IMG/VR virus record: IMGVR_UViG_3300046665_000548
Span: 62,001 to 126,000 of that record
Length of the DNA: 64,000 nt
Strand: one strand, 5' to 3'
A model generated the notes under the pieces. It had not been told where the DNA came from and did no database searches. It saw only the letters and a program-made list of their open reading frames with translations. The position numbers were made by a program, and so were the translations under genes. Within the stretch, counting starts at the first letter, position 1; the number at the start of each line of letters is the position of its first letter. Shown here piece by piece: positions 5,073-58,896 of this stretch.

Positions 5073-5102
5073 CGGACCGAGGAGGACTGCGATAAATAAC
5101 GG

Positions 5103-6647
5103 ATGACTTTGCCATCCGTACGCGACCTCCTCACCATCGTTGAGAACTCCCAGCTTGATGAAGCTGGTGCTGGACCGTCTCGAATCGTCAAGCACGTTCA
5201 AGACGGTACTCCATTTTTCATGATTTCTGCTATGCGTGCAGACTTGCCGCATAGCGCGAACATGCGCCGCACTCAACTCCTCAGTGAAGAACTGGCCCAG
5301 CACGGGTTGGTCTTCATTCGGACCACAGGTGAATACCAGGAAGACGGCCAAGAGACTCCATCGCAAGAGTTGTCATTCTTCGTCATGGCTCCTGAGCATG
5401 TAAAGCTCGCCCGTTTCGTCAAGATCGGCACGACGCTCATGACCATCTTCAAACAAGATTCGATCCTTGTCGGCAATGGCGAGAACGTCTTCCTGCAATT
5501 TGCGGACGGCTCTACGCATAGCCTCGGTACGGCAGCTACCTTTGCCCCGGCCGTGCTCGCTCATCTCGGTGGCTTCAGCAAGGTCAAGGGACGCAAGTTC
5601 TCATTCACTGAACCTGATGCGGCCCCCAACGCTGTTCGCTATGGCCAGTCGCGTCCTGAGAAGAAGTTGAAACCAGAAGTCGAGCCCGAACTGACGGAGG
5701 ACGCCCCACAGGGTGCCCCCTTTCGCCTCGACCCGCTCGTAAACCCTGAAAACTACAAGATCACAGACAGCCTTGCTGATGTAAAAAATTGGCGAGCTAA
5801 GTGCTTGTATAGTGCTACGTACAATGACGCGTCAAAGAACAAGAAGACGGGTGATTGGGATACGGTTGGCTACGTGATGATCTCCAAGACTGGAGACACT
5901 ATCATTCCAATTCCTCGCGCTGATGAGCATCACATGGGCTTCGACATGCTACATGATCTCAATGATCAGCTTCGGAAGAACGCTCCGCGCGCACGTCGCG
6001 GAAAGAGTGCACCGGTTGAAGAGGTCAAGTATATCAACATTCGAGACTACTTGCCGATTTGGACTGGAGGTAACAACTACATTTACAACAAGGTAGATGT
6101 TAAGGATTACCTCGTTGTTCTTAGCAAGTACCTCAGTTATGGCGGCCCGGATGGTTTCATGAAGGGCTCAAACGACATGAGAGGCATGGTTATGAGCCTC
6201 AGTGATTTTGTTAAAAACAAGGGTCCGCACGTGATCAAGCCCGGCGAACTTGCTCCTGTTGGAAAGTCAATCTACGCTGCGCTCCAGACCGCCGCGACCG
6301 CATTGAACGCCGCTCGCGGAAATCCGCAGCGCTCCGCGATTGGAAAAGCATTTCAAGCTTCTCTGTCTCTTCTCGACTTCTTCTACAAGACGTGCGGGCA
6401 AACCAATTTGGGATGGGACGAGATCAAAGCTACGATCAAGGCCGTGTCTGCGCTCAAGAAGACGGGCGACGTTCAAAAGCTCGAAGAGATCATGTTCGGA
6501 TTTGGCAGTTTGAAGAACAAGATGCACAACGAGCTTCGTGCAACTCTCGAACGTCAGACGAAGGGCGAGAGAAGCTGGCAAGACGATGATGCCAAAGCTA
6601 CATGGGGCGATGTTGCGATGGCGGTGGACCTGTTGGGGCGCTTCTAA
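5103..6647 (+). CDS. Tagged putative virion protein with an N-terminal T3-type SAM lyase-like domain and an unknown C-terminal domain
   Basis: N-terminal tag VRDLLTIVE; ISAMRADL..ANMRR, TGEYQE..QELSFFV and FKQDSILV resemble T3 SAMase motifs; TAAATA 4 nt upstream. Confidence 0.65.
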   Translation: MTLPSVRDLLTIVENSQLDEAGAGPSRIVKHVQDGTPFFMISAMRADLPHSANMRRTQLLSEELAQHGLVFIRTTGEYQEDGQETPSQELSFFVMAPEHVKLARFVKIGTTLMTIFKQDSILVGNGENVFLQFADGSTHSLGTAATFAPAVLAHLGGFSKVKGRKFSFTEPDAAPNAVRYGQSRPEKKLKPEVEPELTEDAPQGAPFRLDPLVNPENYKITDSLADVKNWRAKCLYSATYNDASKNKKTGDWDTVGYVMISKTGDTIIPIPRADEHHMGFDMLHDLNDQLRKNAPRARRGKSAPVEEVKYINIRDYLPIWTGGNNYIYNKVDVKDYLVVLSKYLSYGGPDGFMKGSNDMRGMVMSLSDFVKNKGPHVIKPGELAPVGKSIYAALQTAATALNAARGNPQRSAIGKAFQASLSLLDFFYKTCGQTNLGWDEIKATIKAVSALKKTGDVQKLEEIMFGFGSLKNKMHNELRATLERQTKGERSWQDDDAKATWGDVAMAVDLLGRF

Positions 6648-6886
6648 TGGCGGCGATGTTCAACGGCGGGATTCGTCGCATGTCGGGAACCTTCGAGATC
6701 AAACTCGATGGTTGCGGCACTGCATCACAATGGCGCAAGATAGAAAATTGGCTTGAGAACGATGACAATACCAATGTCTCGGGCGAATATGGCCACTCTT
6801 TCAGCGGCACTCTGGCCGAACCTCTGTTACGAGTTTGGTTCACTGACGAAAAGACGGCAATCTTTACCAAGCTGTCTTGGGGATAA
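6647..6886 (+). CDS. FKLRW-family small protein
   Basis: C-terminal WFTDEKTAIFTKLSWG; TAATG coupling. Confidence 0.6.
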   Translation: MAAMFNGGIRRMSGTFEIKLDGCGTASQWRKIENWLENDDNTNVSGEYGHSFSGTLAEPLLRVWFTDEKTAIFTKLSWG

Positions 6887-6942
6887 AAGGACTTGACGAA
6901 GCTCTAATTTGTGGTAGATTGAGTCTATCACAGGAGCGATGC

Positions 6943-7326
6943 ATGGCCGACCGAGCTTACATTCTCTCGATCATTTCCGACCTGACCAAGGATGCTACCG
7001 GTTCGCGTATCCGTTTGGATTACCAGTCCATGACGGACTCGGAATTGCAAAGCACCTTCGATTTTTATTCCGATCTGCTCGAAGTCAATGAGCAGCGTGA
7101 AAGCGTTATGCGCCTCCGCGCGCAGAAGGATTGGGAACAGTCCTTGGAACGGCTTATGTCGATGGGCGCGACCTCAATGGCTCAGGCCATCGCGTGGGAC
7201 ATGGAAGCCGAGGGCGTCAACGACAATGACTACGGCTTCTACTGCTATCTCAAGGGTCTCTCGTACGATCTGGAGGCGCGCATTGTCAGCGAAGTCAGCG
7301 CGTCTGAGGAAAGGATCGCGGCATGA
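6943..7326 (+). CDS. Early hypothetical protein
   Basis: CTTGAC-N-TAGATT promoter and AGGAG RBS upstream. Confidence 0.7.
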   Translation: MADRAYILSIISDLTKDATGSRIRLDYQSMTDSELQSTFDFYSDLLEVNEQRESVMRLRAQKDWEQSLERLMSMGATSMAQAIAWDMEAEGVNDNDYGFYCYLKGLSYDLEARIVSEVSASEERIAA

Positions 7327-10160: not shown

Positions 10161-10939
10161 TTACCCTTGCGAACCGAATCCGTCTTGCGCTTCAAGACGT
10201 ATGTCTTGCCGCCCTTCTGGAATACCCGACCATGTTCCTTATTGTCATCATCCAGATTTCCCTGATCGCTGACTTTACCGGTGGTCTTAGCACGTGAAGA
10301 CTTTGGAGAGATTTGCGGAGCACCCTCGATGTGATCGTTGAACGCGCCGTTGTCGTCAGCGACTTCGCTCTTCGGATAATCGAGGAACTTGAATAGAGGA
10401 TTGGCGGGATCGCGGCGAGCTTCGGCGCGCTCCTTCTCGACCTTTCCGAGAACACCCAGAAAGCGAGAGTTGTATTCGTTGCCATAAAGCTGGCTGGCAT
10501 CGACCTGTTCTGCTTCCTCGTAGCCGTCCTTTGTAAGAAGCGATCCCGGCTCCAGGTTGCGACGCTTTGCTTCGTCGGCCATATCGGCTTCGGCGTTCAG
10601 CTTCTCAGTCTCATTCTCTATCGGATCATTGTCGCCACGGACGACGATGAATGATTTCGGACATCCCAGGGCGAGATGAAGTTCTTCCATCATCACGTAA
10701 GGAGATGCCGGGAAAGCGAGTTCGACATCCAGTATGTAAACCTCGACGTTCGACAGCGAGGGGAAATCTAGTGGAGCCTTCTGGAAGATCGTCTTCTTCG
10801 GCGCGGAAATGTCAAGCGGCTCATATTTCAGCAGAGCTTGCTCGATCTCATCTCTGACCTCATCCGTGACTTCCACGACGGTCTTGATTCGGTAGTTGTA
10901 GGTCCGCTCGACGGCGGCGAGATATTTACGGATATCCAT
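10157..10939 (-). CDS. Late hypothetical, probable virion protein
   Basis: TAAATA upstream; N-terminus MDIRKYLAAVE. Confidence 0.7.
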   Translation of the reverse strand: MDIRKYLAAVERTYNYRIKTVVEVTDEVRDEIEQALLKYEPLDISAPKKTIFQKAPLDFPSLSNVEVYILDVELAFPASPYVMMEELHLALGCPKSFIVVRGDNDPIENETEKLNAEADMADEAKRRNLEPGSLLTKDGYEEAEQVDASQLYGNEYNSRFLGVLGKVEKERAEARRDPANPLFKFLDYPKSEVADDNGAFNDHIEGAPQISPKSSRAKTTGKVSDQGNLDDDNKEHGRVFQKGGKTYVLKRKTDSVRKGK

Positions 10940-11052
10940 GTGAGAAATACTGCCCTTGGTCAGTGTGCCTTGTATTTATGATAGGTGGGAAATCGCTTGA
11001 ACCGCTTGACAATACTCGAAATCGTGGTAGTTTTTAACAAAAGGGATTTGAA

Positions 11053-12796: not shown

Positions 12797-12848
12797 TCGG
12801 ACAAGTTCTACTGCCTGCTAAATACAGGAGAATAATTGTAGGACTAAA

Positions 12849-15593
12849 ATGCCGAACTCTGCTGAACAACTACGCGAATGGCTGCGCCTCTTCGAAGATG
12901 ATACCGATTCGTCGTCGGATTCCTCTTCGGACTCCTCAACCTCAGATTCGTCTAGTGATACATCAACCGATTCGACTAAAACCGATACGAAGGCATCAGA
13001 GCCCGCATCGAGTCCGTCTGAGCCAGCATCAGCCCCTTCGGAACCAGCATCGACCTCCGCGAGCGCACCTAGTTCTGCGTCGTCTGGATCGGATTCGAAG
13101 CCTGCTACTCCGTCCGCAACGACGGACGTGGCCTCAGTAAGTCAGCCAGTTGCTTCCACCCCGTCTCCGGTGGCCGTTCCTACGTCAGCTTCAACGTCAG
13201 CTTCAACGTCGGCGGCTATGCCCGCTTCGACGCCTAGTTCGAGCCCGGCGACTGTTTCTACGTCACTGGCATCAGCGCCAACGCCAACTTCGACAACTGC
13301 ACCTACATCCGTTCCAATCAAATTCGACGCTAATAAGATCGGAGGAGAAGGTGGAGCCTCAGCACTTCTAGGTAAGATGGGATATCCGCCAGTCAACATC
13401 CTGGGCAACGGCCCGTCTCAGCTTGGTATTTCAAGTGCCTCGAAGGAACCTAATGCTAACCCCGCCAGCATTATCAATGCTATGGGTGGGCGAGATCGCG
13501 TAACACAAGGACTGTCGAACCTTTCGACAACGGAGCGCGGCCAAGTATCGAGCGCATTTGGCGGAGAGCAACAGCTTCAGGCTGCACTCGATGGCAAAAC
13601 TGAATTCACTCCGCCTGCTGCCGCTGCTGCGGCTAAGGCTGCTCCATCACAAAGCGCTCCTGCGATGCCAGCTTCATCGCCTGTTTCAGCGCCAGCTACC
13701 TCTGCGGCACCGTCTGCTACGCCTTCCGCGTCGAAACCTGCTGCCGCTGCTTCGACGGCCACGCCTTCGACGGCCACGCCTTCGGCTGCTGCGACGCCTT
13801 CGGCTGCTGCGACGCCTTCGGCTGCTGCGACGCCTTCGGCTGCTGCACCATCAACATCTTCATCTACAAATTCTGACGCTACCACCGCGAACGCCAGAAT
13901 GGCCGCATTGCTTGGCCAGAAGAATGTTAGTGACACCACGCCTGATCCGACTAAGGCTTCTGAGCCATCAAAGGCGGCCAGCGTACCCAGCACATCGACA
14001 CCCAGCACAACAAGTGGCGCGGCACCGTCTGCATTGGCAACAAGTCCAGCTAAGACTGCACCAGCCAACGCAACCGAGACCAAATTTGGTGACATCGGCG
14101 CGCTTTCCGGAAAATACGAGTCGGGTGGAAAAAGCGTTCATATGGTCAGCACTGGTAAAGACGATCCAGGAGGTGTTTCATACGGTCGCAATCAGCTTTC
14201 GACCAAAGACAGTATGCCTGCCTATCTACGCGCACCAGAATCCGCTGCGTATCGAGACCAACTAAAAGCGGCAGGTCCAGTCGGTAGCCCTGCCTTCAAT
14301 CAGGCATACAAGGATGTCGCCGCGCGTGATCCAGATGGTTTTCAAAAGTCACAAAATGACTTCTTGATGAGAACGCACTACGATCCAGTGAAGAGTGTTG
14401 CCGATAAGCAAGGTTTCGACACGAACAGTCGAGCCGTGCAACAGGCACTATTCAGCACTAGCGTTCAACATGGACGTGCTGCCGATATTGTGAGAAATGC
14501 CGGAGACATGACCGGCAAGACACCGCAACAGCAGATCAACGCACTTTATGACGCACGAACTGCGTACACACAAGGATTGCCTAATCTTCCAGATAATACA
14601 AAAGCTAGCGTAATAAATCGTTTCGGTAATGAGAGAAACGATGCTCTCGCAATCGCCAGCAGTCCGAACGACAAAAATCCCTTCGACAATAACACGGCAA
14701 CTGCGTCGAACGGAAGCGCCCCTGCGACGAGCGGAAGTAAACCTGCGACCGGGGGCACACAGGTAGCATCAAACTCTCCTGTGGCTCCGAGCAACCACAT
14801 GGACATCGCTCGGTCTATGGTCGGAAAGAACTCGGATCAGGCTCGACAAGATATTACATCTAGAGGCGGTAAGTTCAATAACGGCGTCTGGTGTGCAGAC
14901 TTTGCGAACGATGTTCTCAAGCAGAGTGGACAGCAAGGTAGCGGTAGTTCAATGGCGAAGAGCTTCTTGAACGTCGGTACGAAGGTGGACGCGTCAGAGG
15001 CTAAAAATGGCGACATCGTTGTATTCAATCGCGGCGCTCCGGGCTCCGCGTCGGGTCACGTTGGTTTTGTGGACAGGGTTAATCCAGATGGCAGTGTCAG
15101 AGTTCTGGGCGGAAATCAGGGCGGTCAAGTTAGTATCAAAAACTTTCCCGCAAGCCAAGTTGTCGGTTTCCGAAGAATTGACGGCGCGGGCACGGGAACT
15201 GGCAACGGCGGCACGGCAGTAGCGGCAAACTCTAACACGTCGAACGGAAATGCTTCCAGCAAACCTGCTACGAGCAATGCTGGTAGCTCTGGATCAGCCA
15301 GTAGCGCACCGACCAAAACAGCAAGTAACACAGCGCCGTCAGCGTCCAGCAACACTCGTTCGCAAGATACTCCTGCTTGGACTCCTAGGATTGCATCGTC
15401 ATCCGATGGCCCAGACCTGAAGCGTCCCAAGTCTGCCGATGACACGCCAACTACGGTCCAGGCCAGCACAGACACTCCTGGCGGTGTTGTTACGCCTAGC
15501 TACAGCGCGCCAACACCTAACGCATCACCGAACTTCTTGGCATCGCTTGAGCGTAGCAGGCGACGAGGAGGCAGTTCGAGAATGGCTGCCTAA
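12849..15593 (+). CDS. Large virion-associated peptidoglycan hydrolase with lysozyme-like and NlpC/P60-CHAP domains and S/T/A/P linkers
   Basis: LSGKYESGG..STGKDDPGGVSYG (muramidase-like); WCADFAN..GDIVVF..GHVGFV..LGGNQ (CHAP/NlpC-P60); N-terminal LREWLRLFE; TAAATA upstream. Confidence 0.8.
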   Translation: MPNSAEQLREWLRLFEDDTDSSSDSSSDSSTSDSSSDTSTDSTKTDTKASEPASSPSEPASAPSEPASTSASAPSSASSGSDSKPATPSATTDVASVSQPVASTPSPVAVPTSASTSASTSAAMPASTPSSSPATVSTSLASAPTPTSTTAPTSVPIKFDANKIGGEGGASALLGKMGYPPVNILGNGPSQLGISSASKEPNANPASIINAMGGRDRVTQGLSNLSTTERGQVSSAFGGEQQLQAALDGKTEFTPPAAAAAAKAAPSQSAPAMPASSPVSAPATSAAPSATPSASKPAAAASTATPSTATPSAAATPSAAATPSAAATPSAAAPSTSSSTNSDATTANARMAALLGQKNVSDTTPDPTKASEPSKAASVPSTSTPSTTSGAAPSALATSPAKTAPANATETKFGDIGALSGKYESGGKSVHMVSTGKDDPGGVSYGRNQLSTKDSMPAYLRAPESAAYRDQLKAAGPVGSPAFNQAYKDVAARDPDGFQKSQNDFLMRTHYDPVKSVADKQGFDTNSRAVQQALFSTSVQHGRAADIVRNAGDMTGKTPQQQINALYDARTAYTQGLPNLPDNTKASVINRFGNERNDALAIASSPNDKNPFDNNTATASNGSAPATSGSKPATGGTQVASNSPVAPSNHMDIARSMVGKNSDQARQDITSRGGKFNNGVWCADFANDVLKQSGQQGSGSSMAKSFLNVGTKVDASEAKNGDIVVFNRGAPGSASGHVGFVDRVNPDGSVRVLGGNQGGQVSIKNFPASQVVGFRRIDGAGTGTGNGGTAVAANSNTSNGNASSKPATSNAGSSGSASSAPTKTASNTAPSASSNTRSQDTPAWTPRIASSSDGPDLKRPKSADDTPTTVQASTDTPGGVVTPSYSAPTPNASPNFLASLERSRRRGGSSRMAA
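13760..13845 (+). repeat. In-frame 18-bp tandem repeat encoding (A)TPSAA
   Basis: CGCCTTCGGCTGCTGCGA-type unit repeated about four times within the linker. Confidence 0.8.
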
Positions 15594-15857: not shown

Positions 15858-15874
15858 CGACTATAAATAAACGG

Positions 15875-16312
15875 ATGTCTTATCTTTTCCTGAAAGGGGC
15901 TTCGGGCGCGGTTCAACCCCACACGTCATTCCGCTTCCGCGTCGATCTTTACAACCTTCTCCATAAGCTTCACGACGTTGACGAAGTATTCAGTCAATGC
16001 GTGATGAGCGCCGAACTCAATTTTACAGAAGGTTTGCTTAAGGTGAAGGTTGCCTCTCCGGTCAACGGAGCGCTAGACGAATTCCTGGAGCTACTATTCA
16101 AAGATTCGGTTTGGGTGCTTCGAGTTGTTCTTCTCGATAACGACAATGATCCGACTGTCGGCTATCGCTTAACCGACCCTTTTTTGGTCTCGCACAGTCT
16201 CGGGGGATTAAGTTATGATAATCCCGAAAACGTGTATCATGAGTTCGGTTTCGGCTTCATGAGCAAGCACTACGAACGCCTTAGTCCTTCTTTGAAAGCG
16301 CTTGTGCCCTAA
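15875..16312 (+). CDS. Divergent tail-tube-like protein
   Basis: QPHTSFRFRV and LSYDNPE resemble QPKPKHRFRV and FDYGSAE of 18628..19209; TATAAATA upstream. Confidence 0.5.
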   Translation: MSYLFLKGASGAVQPHTSFRFRVDLYNLLHKLHDVDEVFSQCVMSAELNFTEGLLKVKVASPVNGALDEFLELLFKDSVWVLRVVLLDNDNDPTVGYRLTDPFLVSHSLGGLSYDNPENVYHEFGFGFMSKHYERLSPSLKALVP

Positions 16313-16805
16313 GCTGCTTGATCAACTCGTTCCGATCTTCGTGGACAATCGCCTGAGCATTGATGGCACCAGGAATCGATCCTTCAGGACCTGCAATGGC
16401 GCGATCAAGCTCAAGCTTCTTCTGGTTCAAAGCAAGCTGCATCGCTTTTAATTGCGCATCTCGCTTGGAGTCCTTCGCGTCCTTTGCCATACGAAGGAAC
16501 TGACCGGCAACTTCAAATGTGCGAGACTGGCGCGCTGGGTCAACGTTCCAACCCATGTCCACCATATCTTCATACATCTTGAGCGCACGATCCGAGATGT
16601 CGTCCATCGCGTCGCCGTGGTCTTTGCCCTCAATCAGACTGAGGCTCTTTTCCGCAATATCGAGCGTCTTGGCCATTTCAGGCGTATCCGCAGAATTTTC
16701 TACTTCATCTTCATAGATTGTTTTTTCACGCTTTAGTACGCCCTCTTCCTTGAGGATGTCGTCAAGATGAGGGAGCCCGAGAGCATCTTCTAATCCACGA
16801 GTCAC
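16281..16805 (-). CDS. Helical protein, possible terminase small subunit
   Basis: Coiled-coil protein of suitable size after the gp4-like gene; function inferred only. Confidence 0.4.
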   Translation of the reverse strand: MTRGLEDALGLPHLDDILKEEGVLKREKTIYEDEVENSADTPEMAKTLDIAEKSLSLIEGKDHGDAMDDISDRALKMYEDMVDMGWNVDPARQSRTFEVAGQFLRMAKDAKDSKRDAQLKAMQLALNQKKLELDRAIAGPEGSIPGAINAQAIVHEDRNELIKQLRAQALSKKD

Positions 16806-17273
16806 TTACTTTCTCCTATCGTATTTAAATAGCGAGCTTTCAGTGATTACTTGAAAATCGATGCCGCGCTGGGTGCAGTATATTACAGCAGCCTTCCACT
16901 TTGCAGCATTGATCGCTTGTACGTGTATGGTGATCGGTTTGACCTTCAGAGGCTTACCTGTTCTCTCGGAGACAGGCTGATAACCTGGGGTCTCCTTCAA
17001 AGGCTTGATCTCAAGCATCGTCTTTTTCTTGTTTCCGTTTTTGTCTTGATAGATGACAAGAAAATCCGGAATATAGAATGTCCATTTGCCTGTGAATGGA
17101 TTTTGATAGGGGATGCTGACAGACTCTGACGACCACGCAACCACGCTGGGATGCTTGTCGAACCTTTCCATGCACTTCAACTCCCAACGCGAGCGAAACG
17201 TAATAGGATGCTTCCCTACGTACTTGCCAGGATTGGTAGGAGTGAACTGTCCCTTGTAAGTATTCATGCTCAT
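16806..17273 (-). CDS. Head completion nuclease (T4 gp4-like, TnsA-type)
   Basis: YKGQFTPTNPGKYVG, RSRWE, WSSE, YIPDF, EIKP, NAAKW, ITE motifs. Confidence 0.9.
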   Translation of the reverse strand: MSMNTYKGQFTPTNPGKYVGKHPITFRSRWELKCMERFDKHPSVVAWSSESVSIPYQNPFTGKWTFYIPDFLVIYQDKNGNKKKTMLEIKPLKETPGYQPVSERTGKPLKVKPITIHVQAINAAKWKAAVIYCTQRGIDFQVITESSLFKYDRRK

Positions 17274-18627: not shown

Positions 18628-19209
18628 TTACATCATTGGTCCGGAGAGCAATTCCGGGTTCTCAGGCATCAGGCCACCAAGCTGCGTTGCGTTGTCGTAA
18701 CGAACAGACATTTGGATGGTCATTGGCTCAGCAGAACCGTAATCGAAACCGTCGTAGTTGATGCTTTCAAGGAAGCAGTTTTCCAGATACCACTGCTCAA
18801 GAACGCCATCGTTACCGCCGTCAAGCGTTTCGATGTACATTTCGAACTTGTAGTTCGAACCAGCGAGCGGAGAGGTCTGCTCGAAATGGTTCATCTGCTT
18901 CTGCTCTTGGTGACCGATCAGCTTAGCAACAGCGTTCGTAACGTCGTCACGAACTGAAAGCTCAACTGGCGACCACTCAGCCTTGCCTGCGTAGTAAGCG
19001 ATGCTGTTGTAGGAATCGACCTTAACAGCGCCCTGGCTACGGGACGGACGGCTGACGTGCATAACCTGTTGTGTGAGTTCAAGACCGCCTGCAATCGGAC
19101 CGAACTTGAAGACGCGTACGCGGAAGCGATGCTTTGGCTTTGGCTGAAGAATGCCACCGCGTCCAGCACCACCTCCCAAAGGTACGCCAAAATTCTGTAA
19201 TGTGCCCAA
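18628..19209 (-). CDS. Tail tube protein (gp19-like), TTG start
   Basis: LQPKPKHRFRV..RPS..YYAGKAEWSPVELSVRDD..W.LENCF..YDNA; AGGAG RBS and TAAATA promoter. Confidence 0.85.
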   Translation of the reverse strand: MGTLQNFGVPLGGGAGRGGILQPKPKHRFRVRVFKFGPIAGGLELTQQVMHVSRPSRSQGAVKVDSYNSIAYYAGKAEWSPVELSVRDDVTNAVAKLIGHQEQKQMNHFEQTSPLAGSNYKFEMYIETLDGGNDGVLEQWYLENCFLESINYDGFDYGSAEPMTIQMSVRYDNATQLGGLMPENPELLSGPMM

Positions 19210-19352
19210 GGACTTAGCTCCTTTTGTTAATGTTATTGTTGAGCATAAATTTGAGCTTCTAGCTCGCGTTCAACTCCCTACAAGTATTTAGCGGAAGTTG
19301 ATCTATTCGGTTATTATACGAGTATAAATAGGCATGAATACATTGCAAAACT

Positions 19353-20084: not shown

Positions 20085-20329
20085 TGGCTCAAATTCTCGA
20101 ATTACCATTCGAGGTGATCTATGACCCGTATCACTCCGGCCGACATTTCGCTTTGAAGGCGGAAATTGTTGAATGGTGCTACGCCAATCTCCAAGGACAT
20201 TACGAAGTTGAGTATGTCCGCGAAAACGTGAAGATGAAGAAGGGTCGTGTGCATTCATACACGATGAGCTTCTTCGGTGTATTTATGGATGAGAACGACG
20301 CCTTGCTGTTCAAGCTGCGCTGGCTATAA
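20084..20329 (+). CDS. FKLRW-family small protein
   Basis: EIVEWC...FMDENDALLFKLRWL. Confidence 0.7.
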   Translation: MAQILELPFEVIYDPYHSGRHFALKAEIVEWCYANLQGHYEVEYVRENVKMKKGRVHSYTMSFFGVFMDENDALLFKLRWL

Positions 20330-20336
20330 ATAGTCG

Positions 20337-22137: not shown

Positions 22138-22165
22138 CGGCCGATATTTAGTCCCTCAGAAACGA

Positions 22166-34526: not shown

Positions 34527-34529
34527 CCA

Positions 34530-39415: not shown

Positions 39416-39485
39416 AAAATGATCTTACCAAAGAAAAGGAAAAGTTCCAGCTAAATATTCGCACAACAACCAACCGAGGACTTAT

Positions 39486-42236: not shown

Positions 42237-42301
42237 AGCAAAAACCTCAAAGTATGAAATCATAAAACACGACGCCAAGGTAAAGCGTCAATAAATACGA
42301 G

Positions 42302-43666
42302 ATGATCGAAAAACTAGACCATTGGTACGACGCGCAGATGCGTCGCTTCCTTGCCCAAATTGTCAGAGCCTTCTCTGGATTTCAATATACAACGGGCTGG
42401 AAGGACGGGCAGGCACCTCAGGCCATGCAGGTTCCGTGTCGTTTGGCGTCAACGGACCGAATGGTCGCGAATATGATCAAAAATGGTTCCGAGAACACCC
42501 TGAATACGGTCCCGATGATCGTCATCTATCAGACTGGTATTGCCGGTCGCCGCCAGGATGTGCAGAACCTTAACCACGTCGATTCCCGTGTTGTTCAAGA
42601 ACGCGCCATCGATCCGGTCAGCGGGAAGTACACACCCCTGAAGGGTCACGGCTACACCGTGCAGAGAATGATGCCACGTCCGTTCGAAATGACGGTCAAC
42701 GTTGATATCTGGACTTCAACCACAGATCAAAAGCATCAGCTATTCGAGCAGATCGCAACCATCTTCTATCCGGACATCTACATCCAGAATTCCGACAATG
42801 CTCTCGACTGGACCGCGATGACCACAATGGAATGGGTTGACTGCCAATGGTCGTCCAGAGCTATTCCGGTCGGCACTAACGACGAAATCGACGTGTTGAC
42901 GATCAGTTTCCGTCTTCCAATCTGGATTTCTCCTCCCGCCAAGGTCATGCAGATGAAGCTCATCGAGCAGGTCATCTCGAACATCCATGACGGTCGCCAC
43001 ACCGACGAGATCAGCGCAGACAATCATCTGTTCCGGCACATCACGACGCCGGGCAATCACTCGGTTCGTGTAGAAAACGGCAAAATACTTCTTCTCGGTC
43101 CAGAGGGGTCTGAGCATGGAGCAGACGGCAACACCTATACGTGGAAAAAGCTCATCGATCTGTACGGCGTTCTACGGCCGACACTGAGCACCATTCACCT
43201 TCTTACTAGTACCGATTTGGACGACCGCACGCGCGATGTCATCGGCACGATCCAGTACGACAACAACAATCCAAACGAAATCTTCTTCCAGATCGATCCG
43301 GACACTTTACCGCAGAATACGATGGACCCAATTAATGCGGTCATCGATCCGCGCGAGCATTGGGCCGGTAAGGGTCTTCCAGCCGCAACAGAAGGTCAGC
43401 GTTATCTTCTTCTGCACAGCATAATGCCAGACTCCATCGCCTGGGGCTCTCTCGAAGCAAACGAGAACAGCATCATTGAGTATCAGAACGGAGAGTGGAT
43501 CGTTGCTTTCGACGGCAAACCAGAAACCAACCCAACGCCACAACGCGTGCTGAACCTCGGTAGCTCACGCCAACTAAAGTTCGCTACCAGCGTTGAAGAC
43601 CAGTGGGAATGGTCGCTCGCCATCGACGGAACCTACTACCCCGGCACTTGGCGTCTCGACCTCTGA
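42302..43666 (+). CDS. Tail terminator/sheath stabilizer (T4 gp15-like) with a C-terminal extension
   Basis: WYDAQMRRF, DIWT...QK.QLFEQI...F.P, LTISFRLPIWISPPAKV. Confidence 0.8.
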   Translation: MIEKLDHWYDAQMRRFLAQIVRAFSGFQYTTGWKDGQAPQAMQVPCRLASTDRMVANMIKNGSENTLNTVPMIVIYQTGIAGRRQDVQNLNHVDSRVVQERAIDPVSGKYTPLKGHGYTVQRMMPRPFEMTVNVDIWTSTTDQKHQLFEQIATIFYPDIYIQNSDNALDWTAMTTMEWVDCQWSSRAIPVGTNDEIDVLTISFRLPIWISPPAKVMQMKLIEQVISNIHDGRHTDEISADNHLFRHITTPGNHSVRVENGKILLLGPEGSEHGADGNTYTWKKLIDLYGVLRPTLSTIHLLTSTDLDDRTRDVIGTIQYDNNNPNEIFFQIDPDTLPQNTMDPINAVIDPREHWAGKGLPAATEGQRYLLLHSIMPDSIAWGSLEANENSIIEYQNGEWIVAFDGKPETNPTPQRVLNLGSSRQLKFATSVEDQWEWSLAIDGTYYPGTWRLDL

Positions 43667-46323: not shown

Positions 46324-46441
46324 GGTTTAACGGTATATCGACAGTCCTGAGCCGTAAACCAAAAAATATTCGCTTTCTTTGCATTTTTCAGTTGTAACGG
46401 TTTGGGGAACTGTGTATAAATACGTTCTCTTGATTGGTTAC

Positions 46442-46516
46442 GCGAATGTAATTCAGTGGTAGAATGCCTCGTTGCCAACGAGGTCGCCGTGGGTTCGAGC
46501 CCCACCGTTCGCTCCA
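46442..46516 (+). tRNA. tRNA-Gly(GCC)
   Basis: Cloverleaf; anticodon arm CCTCG-TTGCCAA-CGAGG; GGTTCGA; encoded CCA. Confidence 0.92.
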
Positions 46517-47194: not shown

Positions 47195-47734
47195 TTTTTT
47201 CTTCCATATCTCAATGTAATTCCTAACCTTCTCTTCAACGAGAGGGCGGAATTTGCTGTGCCAATACTGATGGTGCGTAGGGCACATAGGTATTAGGTTC
47301 GCTGGATCATTGTTCTGATGATTTTCATCAAGATGATGCACGGAAACGATATTTCTCTCATCACACACTACGCATTGTTTTTCGTGATGCCCGAAGCAGA
47401 TAGTGGTGTATTTTGTGATCTCGATATTTCTTCTGGATGCCCAGTCGAGTCCTGATCCTCTGTGATTTGAGCAACTGCGGCTACAAAAATACTTTTCCTT
47501 TAGAGGATACTGTTTTTCTCTTTCCCTTATCGAAAAATCCTTCGCGCAAGCATGGCACGCTACTGTGTAGGTTTTCATATCCCCAAGCTGTTTGCTGATG
47601 TATCGCCGTTGGGCATCCGCAAGTGCTTGAGTATCGTTCCTCTTTGGATTATGAGAACACCAACGAGAATGATTGGCTTTCTGACTGGTCGAGGAATATT
47701 CGAAGGTTTCGTCGCAATGAGCACATTTCCACAT
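47180..47734 (-). CDS. HNH homing endonuclease with Zn-finger modules
   Basis: CxxC motifs, FCSRSC, VHHLDENHQNNDPANLIPMCPTHH; TAAATA 4 nt upstream. Confidence 0.88.
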   Translation of the reverse strand: MWKCAHCDETFEYSSTSQKANHSRWCSHNPKRNDTQALADAQRRYISKQLGDMKTYTVACHACAKDFSIREREKQYPLKEKYFCSRSCSNHRGSGLDWASRRNIEITKYTTICFGHHEKQCVVCDERNIVSVHHLDENHQNNDPANLIPMCPTHHQYWHSKFRPLVEEKVRNYIEIWKKKWSER

Positions 47735-47836
47735 ACCTTATTTATGTGGAGTGCTAAGCTATCGCTTAATCAGATGCGATATCGATGTATTCCTAGCTAG
47801 GGGGTGTGTACTTGGCGCGAATATACGGCTTATCAT

Positions 47837-49173: not shown

Positions 49174-49179
49174 TAAATA
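49174..49179 (+). promoter_or_regulatory. Late promoter box TAAATA (representative)
   Basis: Also at 5093, 15864, 19325, 20327, 32890, 42292, 46417 and 53450, and on the minus strand before 30492, 41196, 47734, 58861, 25153 and 19209; resembles the T4 gp55 late promoter TATAAATA. Confidence 0.75.
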
Positions 49180-49184
49180 CTCGC

Positions 49185-49877
49185 ATGAACATGCGCGACA
49201 TCATCACTCTCATTGAAACTCAAGAGCTAGACGAGATTGAACTCGGTGGCCAGTTGGACAGTTCGTTTGTTGATGATCTCGACAAGAAAGATTTGAGCAG
49301 CGATCAGCTTGATCTTTTCGAACCAACCACGACGGGTCAGCCGCGTCTTCCCGCCAATATGAAGTTGATCGGCCGTACGGGTGCGTATTACGTGGCGCAA
49401 CGCACCGGGCCGCTTCCTGGGCAATCTCAATCCAAAGACGAACATCTATACGTGTTCATCAAAGACAATAAAGCTGCGGGCTATATCTGCCTGTATCCGT
49501 GGAGCGGCGATCACGTCAATTATCCGCATCAAGTGAGCTACCAGCCTGATCTGCACGGCAAGGGTCTTCGCACGGCGGCTGTAATGGTTATGCCGGATTT
49601 TCGCGGACAGAACCTTGGCCCGACTATGTACAAATGGGTTTTGGAGAACGTTTGCGACTACATCATTGCCGATGCCACTCACACCCAGGGCGGCGCTGCA
49701 CTCTGGAAGAGAATGCGGGCGATGAAAAATGTGTTTGCGGTAGAGATTTGGAATGCTGACAAATACGAGACGCAACCACGTTGGCACAGGCATGTGTATG
49801 ATCGTGACCACTACATTCCGTGGATCACATTAAGAGGGCGCGAACATAACATTCGGACCGGGGAGGACGACGAATGA
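49185..49877 (+). CDS. Tagged protein with a GNAT acetyltransferase-like domain
   Basis: MNMRDIITLIE tag; VMPDFRGQNLGPTMY acetyl-CoA motif A. Confidence 0.75.
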   Translation: MNMRDIITLIETQELDEIELGGQLDSSFVDDLDKKDLSSDQLDLFEPTTTGQPRLPANMKLIGRTGAYYVAQRTGPLPGQSQSKDEHLYVFIKDNKAAGYICLYPWSGDHVNYPHQVSYQPDLHGKGLRTAAVMVMPDFRGQNLGPTMYKWVLENVCDYIIADATHTQGGAALWKRMRAMKNVFAVEIWNADKYETQPRWHRHVYDRDHYIPWITLRGREHNIRTGEDDE

Positions 49878-53440: not shown

Positions 53441-53461
53441 TGGCAGTCATAAATACTCACC

Positions 53462-53923
53462 ATGAATATGCGCCATTTCATTTCGCTTTGCGAAAGCCAC
53501 TTGTCAGATGCTTTTGAGGGGATCGACAAGCCAACATTAGTTCTCCCGGCCGGGACCGTTCTTTTTCACGGCACGGATCGCCCGGCCAGTGAGTGGGACC
53601 CGCGTGTTGACCCGATTTGGGGACCGGCATGGTTTGGAGCCGACTTTGAGGTGGCTAACAGTTACGCCAAATTTCAGCGCAGTGGCGAGAATGGCGAGCC
53701 GTACATCATTCAGTATAGCACCAACCGTAGCCTCAAGCTTCTAGAGGCTTCTGCGCCAGAAATTGCGGCGGTGATGGATGAATTGTACGACACCTACATG
53801 ACGGATGAAATCGCGGGTGCCATGCACGATCTTGGCTTCGAAGGCTGGCACATCAAAGATACCGAGGTCATGATCGCGGACGGCAACGCGCTTGATTTCG
53901 TCAAGATATTGAAGGTGCAATAA
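53462..53923 (+). CDS. Tagged protein with an ADP-ribosyltransferase-like domain
   Basis: MNMRHFISLCE tag; LPAGTVLFHGT, AWFG....A..YA, GFEGW...TEVMI. Confidence 0.65.
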   Translation: MNMRHFISLCESHLSDAFEGIDKPTLVLPAGTVLFHGTDRPASEWDPRVDPIWGPAWFGADFEVANSYAKFQRSGENGEPYIIQYSTNRSLKLLEASAPEIAAVMDELYDTYMTDEIAGAMHDLGFEGWHIKDTEVMIADGNALDFVKILKVQ

Positions 53924-56883: not shown

Positions 56884-57821
56884 CGGGTAAAATGGAAATG
56901 CATAGCGTCGGTGAAGGCGATTCCAGCCAGATCGGCAAGGGACCAGCAAAGCCGGTCGATCCCTCGCACGCCTCCACCAAAGCTCTCGTTCGCCATCTGC
57001 GGCGCTACGCGAAAGACTGGTGGCTTAAGGCACCGGATGACGAGAGGAATGACAAGTCGCGTTCGTTTGCACCCATGATCATCGCGGTTTGCGCGAATGG
57101 TGATCTTGTTCCTGTCGTAGCCGCAATGGCGTTCGATGAGGACGAGAAGGAACATTTCGCCTTACACATGCGCAAGATGTTCCAGGAGTGGAATGTCGTT
57201 CGCTATGCATTCATGAGCGAAGCCTGGGTGGCAACGTATGAAGGCCCTGATCCACGCGTCGATGGCGGGTTGCCTGAACACTTGAAACCGGCTAACCGGC
57301 ATGACCGCAAAGAGGTCATAACGATTTGCGCGGCGAGCAAGAACGAGGAGTCCGATTTCTACGCTCTGGAAATGATTCGAGATTGGAATACCGGACTGGT
57401 GGTTGACCTTGTTCCGCTCGATACTGGTATGCGGGGCGTGCCGAAGGGCAGGGGCCTCAAGATGTCCGGCCGGTTCATGGAGCTTCTGGAGCCCCCTCCG
57501 TATGTGGGCAACCCAGCCTTGGACCCGGAAAACGTGTCACAGTTCGCCATGCTTTCGGTGATCCTGGAAGCCCCGGAATTCATGCGTGATCGCTACGAAA
57601 AGTTTGGTCAAGATTTCGAGCAGGTCAAAGCAACTGGCTTGGAAATCAAGCAGCGACTTCAAACTGCCGTTGATAATCTCGAAAATGCGCCAGAGCCGGA
57701 ATGGAAAAGTCGCATCGCAGAACTGACCCCGGTCTACCAAGAAGCGATGGAATACGCGAAGAAGATGTTGACCGACATTAACGAGCGAAAGGCTCGCGAA
57801 AATCCGGGTCACCTAAACTAA
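56880..57821 (+). CDS. Hypothetical protein
   Basis: Coupled ORF; FMSEAWV..DRKEVI motif. Confidence 0.65.
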   Translation: MTGKMEMHSVGEGDSSQIGKGPAKPVDPSHASTKALVRHLRRYAKDWWLKAPDDERNDKSRSFAPMIIAVCANGDLVPVVAAMAFDEDEKEHFALHMRKMFQEWNVVRYAFMSEAWVATYEGPDPRVDGGLPEHLKPANRHDRKEVITICAASKNEESDFYALEMIRDWNTGLVVDLVPLDTGMRGVPKGRGLKMSGRFMELLEPPPYVGNPALDPENVSQFAMLSVILEAPEFMRDRYEKFGQDFEQVKATGLEIKQRLQTAVDNLENAPEPEWKSRIAELTPVYQEAMEYAKKMLTDINERKARENPGHLN

Positions 57822-58325
57822 CACGCAGCCGACAAGGTGATATCGTGGTGCCGTACCGCCGTTCATGGCGGTATGGGCCACAGTCGTGTCTACCATCCAC
57901 GTGTAGGAGTTCGCTGGCATGTGCAGGAACTCTTTGACATCGGGGAAAAGCATCATAGCCTGCGGGTTCGTGATCAACGGGATATGCAGCCGTGGTCCGA
58001 AGTCCTTGTGGATAGAGTAGCATCCCCTCGGCGGCACCATCATGATTCTGAAGCGACCAATCTTGTAAGGTGAATTCAGAAAGACCTCGTGCAAATATGA
58101 CCCGACATGATCGGGATGAAATTCAGTAAATTGACTTTCAGTATATCCAATTGCAAGTCGCCCCGTGCTGAACGTGTAGCGATCTTCGGCTGAAATGTCT
58201 GGCGGATTTACCAACCCGATCTGGTTTACTCCGTCCTTGAACCCTACGCTTTCCACAAGCTTCAGGCATTCGGCCGCGAGACGAATGGTGTTAACTCGAT
58301 AGTCTAGTCTCTCGTAAAGCTTCAT
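57813..58325 (-). CDS. 2OG-Fe(II) oxygenase, Asp/Asn beta-hydroxylase-like
   Basis: GRFRIM..P..YSIHKD..RLHIPLITN..HTAMNGG..RYHLV. Confidence 0.8.
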   Translation of the reverse strand: MKLYERLDYRVNTIRLAAECLKLVESVGFKDGVNQIGLVNPPDISAEDRYTFSTGRLAIGYTESQFTEFHPDHVGSYLHEVFLNSPYKIGRFRIMMVPPRGCYSIHKDFGPRLHIPLITNPQAMMLFPDVKEFLHMPANSYTWMVDTTVAHTAMNGGTAPRYHLVGCVLV

Positions 58326-58861
58326 TATCTTGCTCTCAAGTTCAGCACCGAAATCAAAACCTCGGCTGGCTGAGCCAGAGCCCATGATACGGTTTCCGCG
58401 ACCTTTACCGGCGACAGCGCTAGCCTATCACCGATTTGTTCAGCAGACATCGGTGTGTTAACGAGTCCTGGTTTGATATTGATGATGCGACCGGCAAATA
58501 GTGGGGAAAGTTGAGCACAAGCTTTATCGAGTGCCGTTTTGTGGACAGCGTATTCGCTGGGTCGCTGATAGGGGAATTCCGGGGAAAGGCTGCTGATACA
58601 GACAATGGTCTTGTTTGCCAAGCCAGTCCAGCGATAGTAAAAATGATACAAGATGTCTACTTGAGCCATTCCGTAGTAGGCGTTGTTGATCAGTACATCA
58701 AAGTCCTTGGCCATTTTTCCAAGCTCAAAAGCCGATCCTTCTTTTCTAAGATCGAAACCGGTAGCTCGTGAGAAATTCACCACCTCGTGGCCTTCGGCAC
58801 TAATCACATCCGTTATAGCTTTTCCTATTCCAGAAGTGCCGCCCGTAATCGCTATTTTCAT
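58325..58861 (-). CDS. Short-chain dehydrogenase/reductase
   Basis: ITGGTSGIG, INNA, Y-x3-K (YAVHK); TAAATA 5 nt upstream. Confidence 0.88.
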   Translation of the reverse strand: MKIAITGGTSGIGKAITDVISAEGHEVVNFSRATGFDLRKEGSAFELGKMAKDFDVLINNAYYGMAQVDILYHFYYRWTGLANKTIVCISSLSPEFPYQRPSEYAVHKTALDKACAQLSPLFAGRIINIKPGLVNTPMSAEQIGDRLALSPVKVAETVSWALAQPAEVLISVLNLRAR

Positions 58862-58896
58862 ACCCCTATTTACTAGCCCATAGAGGGCGAACTATA

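What the first reader, a model, noticed from the sequence alone, without database searches (positions are those of the whole stretch)
5093..58872. Late promoter box only 3-7 nt before start codons: systematic leaderless late mRNAs
Seen: TAAATA-to-start spacers of 4 (5103), 5 (15875), 3 (19334), 4 (20337), 7 (22137), 5 (30492), 5 (32901), 4 (34526), 7 (41196), 4 (42302), 4 (47734), 5 (49185), 6 (53462) and 5 (58861) nt leave no room for a normally spaced transcribed Shine-Dalgarno. High-copy products (sheath, tube, endolysin) instead have the same box followed by a leader and RBS. Known: T4 late transcription starts a few nt after TATAAATA. Inference: a two-tier late programme that uses leaderless translation for low-copy proteins.
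Basis: partly seen in the sequence, partly recalled or inferred. Interest (0 to 1): 0.6.

Follow-up and report, generated by a model that had tools for sequence, protein, structure and literature searches.

The report
Late promoters fused to start codons
In this 608-kb phage about half of the T4-type late promoters sit so close to a gene's ATG that transcription should begin on the start codon itself, which would give some 70-100 mRNAs with no leader and no ribosome-binding site; no RNA data were available to confirm this.

Summary
The window has 13 TAAATA-N3-7-ATG sites against 1.07 expected. The whole 607,744-bp phage genome has 96 among its 210 TAAATA sites, with the mode at 5 nt.

The box (V-TAAATA, no -35 element) matches the core of the T4 late promoter. 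The genome encodes a gp55-family late sigma factor. The box is almost absent inside genes, marks the first genes of transcription units, and also precedes five tRNA genes. It is therefore a promoter, not a ribosome-binding signal.

Box-to-start distances fall into two classes: 3-8 nt (73 genes) and 20-35 nt with a Shine-Dalgarno (45 genes). Almost nothing lies between them (2 genes at 9-15 nt).

In T4 the box spans -13 to -6, so a 5-nt spacer puts +1 on the A of the ATG. The close class has four expected properties:
- pyrimidine at -1
- near-exclusive ATG starts
- no Shine-Dalgarno
- weakly structured 5' ends

A 578-kb relative repeats the pattern. T4 and Atu_ph07 have essentially only the leadered class.

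Leaderless late mRNAs are thus strongly inferred but not shown, because no RNA run was listed. I rate this a new variant of known kinds: the T4 late promoter, and phiYS40-type leaderless late mRNAs.

The parts
5093..5105 (+). Box 5093-5098, spacer 4, ATG 5103. Gene 5103-6647 (514 aa) with a SAM-dependent methyltransferase domain.
15862..15877 (+). Full TATAAATA 15862-15869, spacer 5, ATG 15875. Gene 15875-16312 (145 aa, unknown function).
19323..19336 (+). TATAAATA 19323-19330, spacer 3, ATG 19334, which opens only 19 codons. This is a promoter for the GIY-YIG homing endonuclease gene (TTG 19353-20084, another frame), not a leaderless gene start.
20325..20339 (+). TATAAATA 20325-20332, spacer 4, ATG 20337. 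Gene 20337-21209 (290 aa). The TAA of the box (20327-20329) is the stop codon of the upstream ORF 20084-20329.
22135..22150 (-). Box 22145-22150, spacer 7, ATG 22137. Gene 21901-22137 (78 aa). A GC hairpin followed by a T-run lies just upstream.
30490..30503 (-). Box 30498-30503, spacer 5, ATG 30492. Gene 29725-30492 (255 aa), head-tail adaptor. The G002 orthologue is leadered but has the same N-terminus.
32890..32903 (+). Box 32890-32895, spacer 5, ATG 32901. Gene 32901-33983 (360 aa), virion structural protein. The family profile aligns from residue 3. The G002 orthologue also belongs to the close class.
34524..34536 (-). Box 34531-34536, spacer 4, GTG 34526. ORF 34041-34526 (161 aa) has no family hit and was not called by my coding model, so this site is uncertain.
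41194..41209 (-). Box 41204-41209, spacer 7, ATG 41196. Gene 40771-41196 (141 aa).
42292..42304 (+). Box 42292-42297, spacer 4, ATG 42302. Gene 42302-43666 (454 aa); it hits phrog_11196 'tail sheath' (2.3e-96) and phrog_227 'tail sheath stabilizer' (9.3e-13), so its exact tail role is open. Its orthologues are Shine-Dalgarno-led (G002) or leadered with a GTG start (L012). The G002 orthologue shares the N-terminus.
47732..47744 (-). Box 47739-47744, spacer 4, ATG 47734. Gene 47180-47734 (184 aa), HNH endonuclease.
49174..49187 (+). Box 49174-49179, spacer 5, ATG 49185. Gene 49185-49877 (230 aa).
53450..53464 (+). Box 53450-53455, spacer 6, ATG 53462. Gene 53462-53923 (153 aa). A terminator-like hairpin lies upstream.
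58859..58872 (-). Box 58867-58872, spacer 5, ATG 58861. Gene 58325-58861 (178 aa), short-chain dehydrogenase-like.
25153..25192 (-). Leadered class: box 25187-25192, 33 nt to the start, GGGAG, ATG 25153. Tail sheath gene 22217-25153. A second box lies at 25257.
19207..19290 (-). Leadered class: box 19285-19290, 75 nt to the start, AGGAG, TTG 19209. Tail tube gene 18628-19209.
39452..39488 (+). Leadered class: box 39452-39457, 28 nt to the start, AGGA, ATG 39486. Endolysin gene 39486-40097.
12819..12851 (+). Leadered class: box 12819-12824, 24 nt to ATG 12849. Baseplate hub / tail lysozyme ORF 12849-15593.
10937..10978 (-). Leadered class: box 10973-10978, 33 nt to ATG 10939. Virion structural protein gene 10157-10939.
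16803..16827 (-). Shortest leadered case: box 16822-16827, 16 nt to the start, with AGGAG beginning at the 5th nt after the box, GTG 16805. Gene 16281-16805.
2670..2709 (-). Leadered class: box 2704-2709, 31 nt to ATG 2672. The small gene 2397-2672 heads the operon that contains the large terminase (804-2390).
46415..46516 (+). TATAAATA 46415-46422 lies 19 nt upstream of tRNA-Gly 46442-46516, the first gene of a tRNA cluster. Here the box drives a non-coding gene.

Best explanation
V-TAAATA is the late promoter of this huge T4-superfamily myovirus. It is read by host RNA polymerase carrying the phage's gp55-family sigma factor, which is encoded outside the window at G000:C1:390863-391693(-).

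As in T4, where TATAAATA spans -13 to -6, transcription should start 5-6 nt after the box, at an A preceded by a pyrimidine. At about half of the promoters that A is the A of an ATG: 73 called genes plus 27 short ORFs genome-wide, and 12-13 sites in the window. The transcript would then begin with AUG and be translated as a leaderless mRNA, by 5'-terminal-AUG recognition without a Shine-Dalgarno.

At the other promoters (about 60 genes) a 15-30-nt leader carries a Shine-Dalgarno. Genes further down each operon use their own Shine-Dalgarno.

Shown here:
- the motif and its spacing statistics
- the gp55 homologue
- the genomic behaviour of the box
- replication of the pattern in a related genome

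Inferred:
- the position of the transcription start site
- late timing
- the leaderless mode of translation
For: 1. Spacing. Window: 13 sites against 1.07 expected. Genome: first ATG at spacer 4/5 in 25/44 of 210 sites, with flat controls.

2. Promoter identity.
- TAAATA is the most enriched hexamer upstream of starts, 26-fold.
- T is excluded at the position just before the box, and there is no -35 element.
- Single-mismatch variants are not enriched.
- A gp55-family sigma is present: 43% identity to the Atu_ph07 late sigma, E 4e-58; phrog_12791 9e-79 and phrog_234 4.5e-19. T4 gp55 is itself phrog_234, and pairwise BLASTP against it gives E 3e-8.
- The sigma gene has no box upstream of it.

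3. Transcriptional, not translational, behaviour.
- Only 12 of 210 boxes lie inside genes, against 115 of 210 for AATAAT (p 3e-30).
- Boxed genes sit at divergent junctions in 48% (close class) and 38% (leadered class) of cases, against 16% for other genes (p 4e-9).
- Five tRNA genes have the box 7-19 nt before their mature 5' end.
- The same box lies 20-35 nt upstream of Shine-Dalgarno-led genes.

4. Start-site geometry.
- The T4 box spans -13 to -6 (PMC2988020), so a 5-nt spacer puts +1 on the A of the ATG.
- At spacer-5 sites the -1 base is C or T in 39/44 cases, against 40% for Shine-Dalgarno-led genes (p 6e-10).
- The leadered class also shows G at position 4 and A at position 6 after the box.

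5. Translation signatures.
- Box-to-start distances are bimodal with a near-empty 9-15-nt zone: 73 / 2 / 3 / 45 genes at 3-8 / 9-15 / 16-19 / 20-35 nt. In G002 the counts are 54 / 0 / 0 / 41.
- At spacers 4-6, codons opening an ORF of at least 60 codons are ATG 66, GTG 7, TTG 0. In G002, 54 of 54 close-class starts are ATG, against 75% for Shine-Dalgarno-led genes (p 1e-6).
- The first 40 nt are less structured: median MFE -3.8 against -5.2, p 6e-4. In G002 it is -3.35 against -6.15, p 6e-10.

6. Start codons validated. Orthologues in G002 begin at the same residue whether they are close-class, leadered or Shine-Dalgarno-led. Family profiles align from residues 3-4.

7. Replication. G002 (578,292 bp, GC 59%) has 55 TAAATAN{4,5}ATG sites against 0 for the reversed control, with spacers 4/5/6 = 15/40/8. 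The 75-kb contig behind L012 and L016 shows 6 of 10 and 6 of 13 boxes at spacers 4-6.
Against: - No transcription start site or expression timing was measured; no RNA run was listed for this sequence.
- The late label rests on homology to T4 and on the structural genes downstream. Boxes are spread over the whole genome, and one precedes a ribonucleotide reductase gene.
- Spacer-4 sites (25 or more) would need initiation at the 5th nt after the box rather than the 6th. Their -1 base is G, so a 1-nt leader or a start on another base cannot be excluded.
- Half of the close-class genes follow a same-strand gene, so they may also be translated from read-through transcripts.
- My gene and start calls gave a bonus to box-adjacent starts. 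The call-free analyses give the same picture.
- No gp45-type clamp family match was found, and gp33 was not searched. The activation mechanism may therefore differ from T4.
Confidence: 0.78

Rival explanations
1. The box is a late promoter, but close-class genes are mainly translated from longer read-through transcripts made at upstream promoters. Initiation would occur by termination-reinitiation or coupling, or with the AU-rich box acting as an S1-type enhancer. The leaderless transcript would be minor or untranslated.
For: 38 of 73 close-class genes follow a same-strand gene, with a median gap of 15 nt. In 13 of those 38 the TAA of the box is the upstream gene's stop codon. Leaderless mRNAs are translated poorly in E. 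coli (general knowledge).
Against: - 35 of 73 close-class genes sit at divergent junctions with no upstream cistron.
- Coupling does not explain the sharp 4-5-nt spacing measured from the box rather than from the stop codon, the C/T at -1, the ATG-only rule, or the weak structure downstream of the ATG.
Confidence: 0.1
2. TAAATA is a non-Shine-Dalgarno translation-initiation signal (an AU-rich ribosome-binding motif) and not a promoter.
For: The motif lies at a fixed short distance from the start codon, and the Shine-Dalgarno is absent.
Against: - The identical hexamer lies 20-35 nt upstream of about 45-60 genes that have their own Shine-Dalgarno.
- It lies 7-19 nt before five tRNA genes.
- It marks strand-switch junctions and is counter-selected on both strands inside genes.
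- It equals the T4 late-promoter core, and a gp55 homologue is present.
Confidence: 0.04
3. The box is a promoter used by a different polymerase or sigma factor, or in a different temporal class (middle or constitutive). The start-site distance would then differ from T4's, giving short leaders or starts internal to the gene.
For: - No gp45-type clamp family match was found.
- Boxes occur throughout the genome and before some metabolic genes.
- Relatives of this clade were reported to lack gp33 and gp45 homologues (PMC5259590).
Against: - No Sigma70_r2 match above the family cut-off and no RNA polymerase beta match were found. The gp55 homologue is the only sigma-like candidate found.
- The ATG peak at spacers 4-5, the pyrimidine at -1 and the empty 9-15-nt zone are hard to explain unless the 5' end is at or within about 1 nt of the ATG.
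Confidence: 0.07
4. The pattern is a chance or compositional artefact, or an artefact of gene calling.
For: The motif is AT-rich and short. My start caller favoured starts next to a box.
Against: - 13 sites against 1.07 expected, with 0 of 100 shuffles reaching 13.
- Control hexamers give flat distributions.
- The pattern is replicated in an independent genome, 55 sites against 0 for the control.
- The call-free analyses agree with the called genes.
Confidence: 0.01

Closest known systems
Bacteriophage T4 late promoters (TATAAATA, recognised by gp55 with gp33 and the gp45 clamp)
   Same: - Same core hexamer, with no -35 element.
- Strict adherence to the consensus.
- A gp55-family sigma factor is encoded.
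- Promoter density is about one per 3.5 kb on both strands.
- The leadered class, with the box 20-35 nt from the ATG and a Shine-Dalgarno, matches T4's arrangement.
   Different: - In T4 every called gene with a box has it 13-34 nt from the ATG; none is at 3-8 nt. Here 55% of boxed genes are at 3-8 nt.
- The two 5' bases of the T4 octamer are not conserved here; the position before TAAATA is any base but T.
- No gp45-type clamp family match was found.
Predicted ATAAATA late promoters of Rak2-like jumbo phages (CBB, GAP32) and of Agrobacterium phage Atu_ph07
   Same: - These are the closest cultured relatives by sheath similarity: Atu_ph07 49%, PA5oct 47%, CBB 44%.
- A gp55-like sigma factor is present.
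- An ATAAATA motif lies before structural genes (PMC5259590; PMC6102473).
- TAAATAC is enriched upstream of Atu_ph07 genes.
   Different: Atu_ph07 is essentially all leadered: 63 genes at 20-35 nt against 5 at 3-8 nt, with no excess of TAAATAN{3,7}ATG over the control. The promoter-on-ATG class was found only in a GC-richer sub-lineage: G000, G002 and the contig behind L012 and L016.
Thermus phages phiYS40 and Lalka: leaderless middle and late transcripts
   Same: A phage temporal class whose promoters lack a -35 element and whose mRNAs start on the initiator codon (bioRxiv 10.64898/2026.04.20.719267; PMC3594737).
   Different: - The promoter motif is different (TAGGGT-type), and the promoter-specificity factor there is only presumed in the source I read, not identified.
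- The host phylum there (Deinococcus-Thermus) uses leaderless mRNAs generally (PMC12340547).
- Here a gp55-type promoter is used in a genome that also uses Shine-Dalgarno heavily, and only about half of the promoters are of the close type.
-10 element adjacent to ORFs in bacteria with leaderless transcription (Deinococcus-Thermus; GeneMarkS-2 leaderless classes)
   Same: A -10-like box a fixed few nt before the start codon is the genomic signature of leaderless genes (PMC12340547).
   Different: That box is the host sigma-A TANNNT element. Here it is a phage sigma's box inside a virus.

Membership tests
T4-type (gp55-dependent) late promoter | Short AT-rich box with the core of TATAAATA, adhered to strictly | tested here: met
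   V-TAAATA; T at the preceding position in 1 of 74 sites; single-mismatch variants not enriched. Five full TATAAATA octamers occur in the window against 0.52 expected.
T4-type (gp55-dependent) late promoter | No conserved -35 element | tested here: met
   Base composition is flat from 30 nt to 2 nt upstream of the box in 74 aligned sites.
T4-type (gp55-dependent) late promoter | The phage encodes a gp55-family sigma factor | tested here: met
   G000:C1:390863-391693(-). phrog_12791 9e-79 and phrog_234 4.5e-19. T4 gp55 is phrog_234 at 2.9e-69. BLASTP against T4 gp55: 32% identity over 74 aa, E 3e-8.
T4-type (gp55-dependent) late promoter | Precedes late (virion and lysis) genes | tested here: met
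   The sheath, tube, hub/lysozyme, endolysin, adaptor, virion structural proteins and a tail-fibre-like protein are all boxed. Some non-structural genes are boxed too.
T4-type (gp55-dependent) late promoter | Transcription starts about 6 nt after the box, late in infection | not testable with these tools
   No RNA run was listed. Only indirect evidence is available: pyrimidine at -1 with A at +1 at the 6th nt, in both classes.
T4-type (gp55-dependent) late promoter | Activation through gp33 and the gp45 sliding clamp | tested here: inconclusive
   The Pfam DNA_PPF family (gp45 type) gave no match. gp33 was not searched. Relatives were reported to lack both (PMC5259590).
Leaderless mRNA | [quoted passage not shown] | not testable with these tools
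   Inferred from the box-to-ATG spacing of 4-5 nt compared with the T4 geometry of -13 to -6.
Leaderless mRNA | No Shine-Dalgarno before the start codon | tested here: met
   A spacer of 3-8 nt leaves no room. Only 2 of 75 box-adjacent starts also scored as having a Shine-Dalgarno.
Leaderless mRNA | Strong preference for AUG as the initiator | tested here: met
   ATG 66, GTG 7, TTG 0. In G002, 54 of 54 close-class starts are ATG, against 75% in Shine-Dalgarno-led genes, p 1e-6. In G000 by called genes the trend is weaker: 68 of 73 against 281 of 329, p 0.09.
Leaderless mRNA | Accessible, weakly structured 5' end | tested here: met
   The MFE of +1 to +40 is weaker than in all other classes in both genomes.
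Non-Shine-Dalgarno ribosome-binding motif | The motif occurs only at a fixed distance before translated start codons | tested here: not met
   The box also lies 20-35 nt upstream of Shine-Dalgarno-led genes and before 5 tRNA genes.

The most novel reading that the evidence does not exclude
A lineage of huge phages (about 580-610 kb) has turned roughly half of its gp55-type late promoters into promoter-on-AUG modules. This creates a regulon of about 70-100 leaderless mRNAs that could be controlled at the level of translation initiation as well as transcription. For example, it could be favoured late in infection if the phage alters ribosomes or initiation factors; the phage encodes two bS21 copies. 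Abundant virion proteins would stay on Shine-Dalgarno leaders. This would be a second, translational tier of the late programme in a T4-superfamily phage.
Probability: 0.15. Interest if true: 0.8.

Novelty: new variant of a known kind. Interest (0 to 1): 0.55.

Why it matters
The T4 late promoter is a textbook element, and in T4 it is followed by a Shine-Dalgarno leader at every boxed gene I could call. Here the same kind of promoter is fused to the start codon at dozens of genes, in two complete genomes of about 600 kb.

- **Prediction.** If the start sites are confirmed, this lineage makes an unusually large set of leaderless mRNAs beside conventional ones in the same cell. That would be a natural system for asking how leaderless and Shine-Dalgarno-led initiation are balanced.
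- **Annotation.** The rule TAAATA-N4-5-ATG fixes start codons that Shine-Dalgarno-based gene callers will misplace. It also flags about 27 very short ORFs that callers will miss.
- **Evolution.** Orthologues flip between the two architectures. The state can change by gain or loss of a leader of about 20-25 nt.

In the paper library I searched, no paper linked gp55-type late promoters or jumbo phages with leaderless mRNAs. The nearest precedents are Thermus phages.

Tried and rejected
- **RNA evidence.** The look-up of sequencing runs (kind rna) on window 15500-25400 listed no run. No start site could be read.
- **Other polymerases or sigma factors.** Sigma70_r2 gave only a sub-threshold hit with internal stops. 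RNA polymerase beta (PF00562) gave nothing. A phiKZ-type phage polymerase explanation was dropped.
- **gp45 clamp.** PF02916 gave no match. This is uninformative, because relatives also lack a recognisable one.
- **Direct tblastn of the gp55-like protein against the whole T4 genome.** No significant hit. The link needed profiles and a pairwise BLASTP.
- **Is the trait shared by cultured relatives?** Atu_ph07 shows no excess. T4 has none.
- **Metagenomic relatives G001, G003, G004 and G005.** None exceeds the reversed-pattern control. The sampled stretches of G001, G004 and G005 are AT-rich (GC 0.32-0.40), where the hexamer is too common to judge. G003's stretch has GC 0.46 and only 7 matches against 4 for the control. 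Pooled AT-rich loci hint at a weak excess that I did not pursue.
- **Simple terminator scan upstream of boxed genes.** My strict hairpin rule found too few sites in any class to be informative.
- **Copy-number hypothesis.** PHROG scans of 20 close-class and 20 leadered genes outside the window left most of them without a function, so the test is underpowered.
- **Alternative genetic code.** Not indicated. All three stop codons are used, and reassigning TAG does not lengthen ORFs more than reassigning TAA does.
- **Not used.** The large protein search and the structure tools were not needed.

Full report
**What the window is.** The window is bases 62,001-126,000 of a 607,744-bp virus record, rated 100% complete by CheckV. 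GC content is about 52%.

It carries a myovirus structural module:
- large terminase, 804-2390(-)
- baseplate hub / tail lysozyme, 12849-15593(+)
- head-closure protein, 16806-17273(-)
- tail tube, 18628-19209(-), and a paralogue, 17847-18623(-)
- tail sheath, 22217-25153(-)
- head-tail adaptor, 29725-30492(-)
- endolysin, 39486-40097(+)
- a tRNA cluster from 46442

By sheath similarity the closest cultured phages are Agrobacterium phage Atu_ph07 (49%), Sinorhizobium phage Phosso, Pseudomonas phage PA5oct and the Rak2-like phage CBB. These are distant T4-superfamily jumbo phages. The standard genetic code applies.

**Check of the observation.**
- TAAATAN{3,7}ATG occurs 13 times in the window, against 1.07 +/- 1.08 in shuffles, with a maximum of 4.
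- In the whole genome there are 210 TAAATA sites on both strands. The first downstream ATG lies at spacer 3/4/5/6/7 in 7/25/44/9/11 of them. Control hexamers of the same composition give a flat 1-3 per bin.
- TAAATA is the single most enriched hexamer (26-fold) in the 25 nt upstream of ORF starts. AGGAG is also enriched, so the phage uses Shine-Dalgarno sites too.
- Two listed sites are weaker. The ATG at 19334 opens only 19 codons; the gene there is a GIY-YIG endonuclease in another frame. 34526 is a GTG start of an unannotated ORF.
The sheath, tube, endolysin and hub/lysozyme genes all have the same box, followed by a leader and a Shine-Dalgarno.

**The box is a promoter of the T4 late type.**
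- Aligned sites give V-TAAATA. T precedes the box in 1 of 74 sites, and nothing is conserved upstream, so there is no -35 element.
- Single-mismatch variants are not enriched. T4 late promoters are similarly strict (PMC2988020).
- The genome encodes a gp55-family sigma factor at 390863-391693(-). It is 43% identical to the annotated late sigma of Atu_ph07 and matches phrog_12791 and phrog_234. T4 gp55 belongs to phrog_234. Pairwise BLASTP against T4 gp55 gives E 3e-8 over the central conserved segment.
- The sigma gene itself has no box upstream.
- No other sigma factor above the family cut-off and no phage RNA polymerase beta subunit were found.

**The box behaves like a transcription signal.**
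- Only 12 of 210 copies lie inside called genes, on either strand. For AATAAT the figure is 115 of 210.
- Boxed genes sit at strand-switch junctions three times as often as other genes: 48% and 38% against 16%.
- Five tRNA genes have the box 7-19 nt before their mature 5' end, against about 0.5 expected by chance.
- The published analysis of CBB already predicted ATAAATA as a late promoter in this wider clade.

**Two discrete architectures.** For called genes, the distance from the box to the start codon is bimodal.

| Genome | 3-8 nt | 9-15 nt | 16-19 nt | 20-35 nt |
|---|---|---|---|---|
| G000 (this phage) | 73 | 2 | 3 | 45 |
| G002 (relative) | 54 | 0 | 0 | 41 |
| Atu_ph07 | 5 | 3 | 5 | 63 |

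- The call-free histogram shows the same gap in G000.
- The far class carries GGAG-type Shine-Dalgarno sites and resembles T4, where boxed genes have the box 13-34 nt from the ATG and never 3-8 nt.
- The shortest leadered case is window 16822. Its Shine-Dalgarno starts at the 5th nt after the box. That fits a start site 5-6 nt after the box.

**Why the close class should be leaderless.** In T4 the octamer spans -13 to -6. TAAATA followed by 5 nt therefore puts +1 on the A of the ATG, and 5 nt is the modal spacer. Five observations fit this.
- At spacer-5 sites the -1 base is C or T in 39 of 44 cases, against 40% for Shine-Dalgarno-led genes (p 6e-10). In G002 it is 35 of 40.
- The leadered class shows the same downstream preferences, G at position 4 and A at position 6 after the box. 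These are therefore promoter features and not start-codon context.
- The close class uses ATG almost exclusively.
- Its first 40 nt are predicted to be less structured than those of every other class, in both genomes.
- The ATGs are the true starts. Family profiles align from residues 3-4, and G002 orthologues begin at the same residue whichever architecture they have.

**Relatives.**
- G002 is a complete 578,292-bp genome with terminal repeats, GC 59% and 59% sheath identity. It has 55 TAAATAN{4,5}ATG sites against 0 for the reversed control, and the same spacer mode.
- A 75-kb contig behind L012 and L016 (GC 54%) also shows the pattern.
- Among 201 reciprocal-best-hit pairs between G000 and G002, being boxed is conserved in 33 of 46 cases. 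The close state is kept in 10 of 20 cases, which is 5 times the chance expectation (p 9e-7). Switches between close, leadered and Shine-Dalgarno-led states are common.
- The orthologue of window gene 42302 is Shine-Dalgarno-led in G002, and leadered with a GTG start in L012.
- Atu_ph07 and T4 lack the close class.

**The copy-number idea.**
- The major capsid protein (367015-368232, -), the sheath and the tube are Shine-Dalgarno-led.
- So are the portal, the operon containing the large terminase, and the baseplate hub.
- The close class includes the adaptor, virion structural proteins, an 871-aa tail-fibre-like protein, an 851-aa peptidase, methyltransferases, a radical-SAM protein and homing endonucleases. 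Many have no known function.
- The idea is compatible with these data but not demonstrated.

**Comparison with what is known.** The promoter type is known from T4 and has been predicted in Rak2-like phages. Leaderless late mRNAs in a phage are known from Thermus phages phiYS40 and Lalka. A -10 box abutting ORFs is the known signature of leaderless genes in Deinococcus-Thermus. The combination found here is a gp55-type promoter fused to the ATG at about half of the promoters of a phage of about 600 kb that also uses Shine-Dalgarno sites. I did not find this described in the searched library.

**Limits.**
- No RNA data were available, so the start site, the timing and the translation mode are all inferred.
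- The host is unknown.
- The gene calls come from my own ORF and dicodon caller, which rewards starts next to a box. The key statistics were repeated without gene calls.

Noticed in passing
G000:C1:1944-2020, 4091-4178 and 4180-4256 (outside the window): ARAGORN calls two tRNAs with anticodon CUA (amber-reading) and one with a four-base anticodon. Yet TAG ends 105 of 822 called genes, and reassigning TAG does not lengthen ORFs unusually.
   Followed up: partly
G000:C1:440677-440832(+) and 510818-510976(-) (outside the window): The phage carries two ribosomal protein bS21 genes, and no IF3 C-terminal domain was found. This may bear on how the phage biases translation initiation.
   Followed up: no
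G000:C1:576377-576796 (outside the window): The phage encodes a tmRNA (tag ANDNVAVSEYALAA) that ARAGORN marks with an asterisk; I read the asterisk as permuted (two-piece). From my own knowledge, that form is typical of Alphaproteobacteria, which would fit the Agrobacterium and Sinorhizobium phage relatives. There are 57 tRNA genes in all.
   Followed up: no
27 sites genome-wide, e.g. window 19325-19336 and G000:C1:149093, 157388, 253288: A box with an ATG at the leaderless spacing opens ORFs of only 1-35 codons. Many begin ATGAA/ATGAC and run 20-35 codons. They may be leaderless micro-proteins or 5' ends of non-coding RNAs.
   Followed up: partly
window 20327-20329, and 13 of 38 same-strand cases genome-wide: The TAA of the promoter box serves as the stop codon of the upstream gene. 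Stop codon, promoter and next start codon then fit into about 13 nt.
   Followed up: yes
window 19323-20084 and 47180-47744; G000:C1:379769-380500: Homing endonuclease genes (two GIY-YIG, one HNH) each carry their own late-type box.
   Followed up: partly
window 46415-47200; G000:C1:138207, 167970, 184089, 301660: Late-type boxes lie 7-19 nt before the mature 5' ends of tRNA genes. In three of five cases the predicted start site is within 1-2 nt of the tRNA 5' end, so these tRNAs would have almost no 5' leader.
   Followed up: partly
window 37781-38821(-): This gene matches a phage RNA ligase family over its full length (phrog_24030, 1e-135). Its N-terminal 80 residues also match HNH endonuclease families.
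   Followed up: no
Atu_ph07 whole genome (L163-L187): TAAATA is two to three times rarer than other A4T2 hexamers in this 37%-GC genome (361 against 720-1104). This suggests counter-selection of stray late promoters there too.
   Followed up: no
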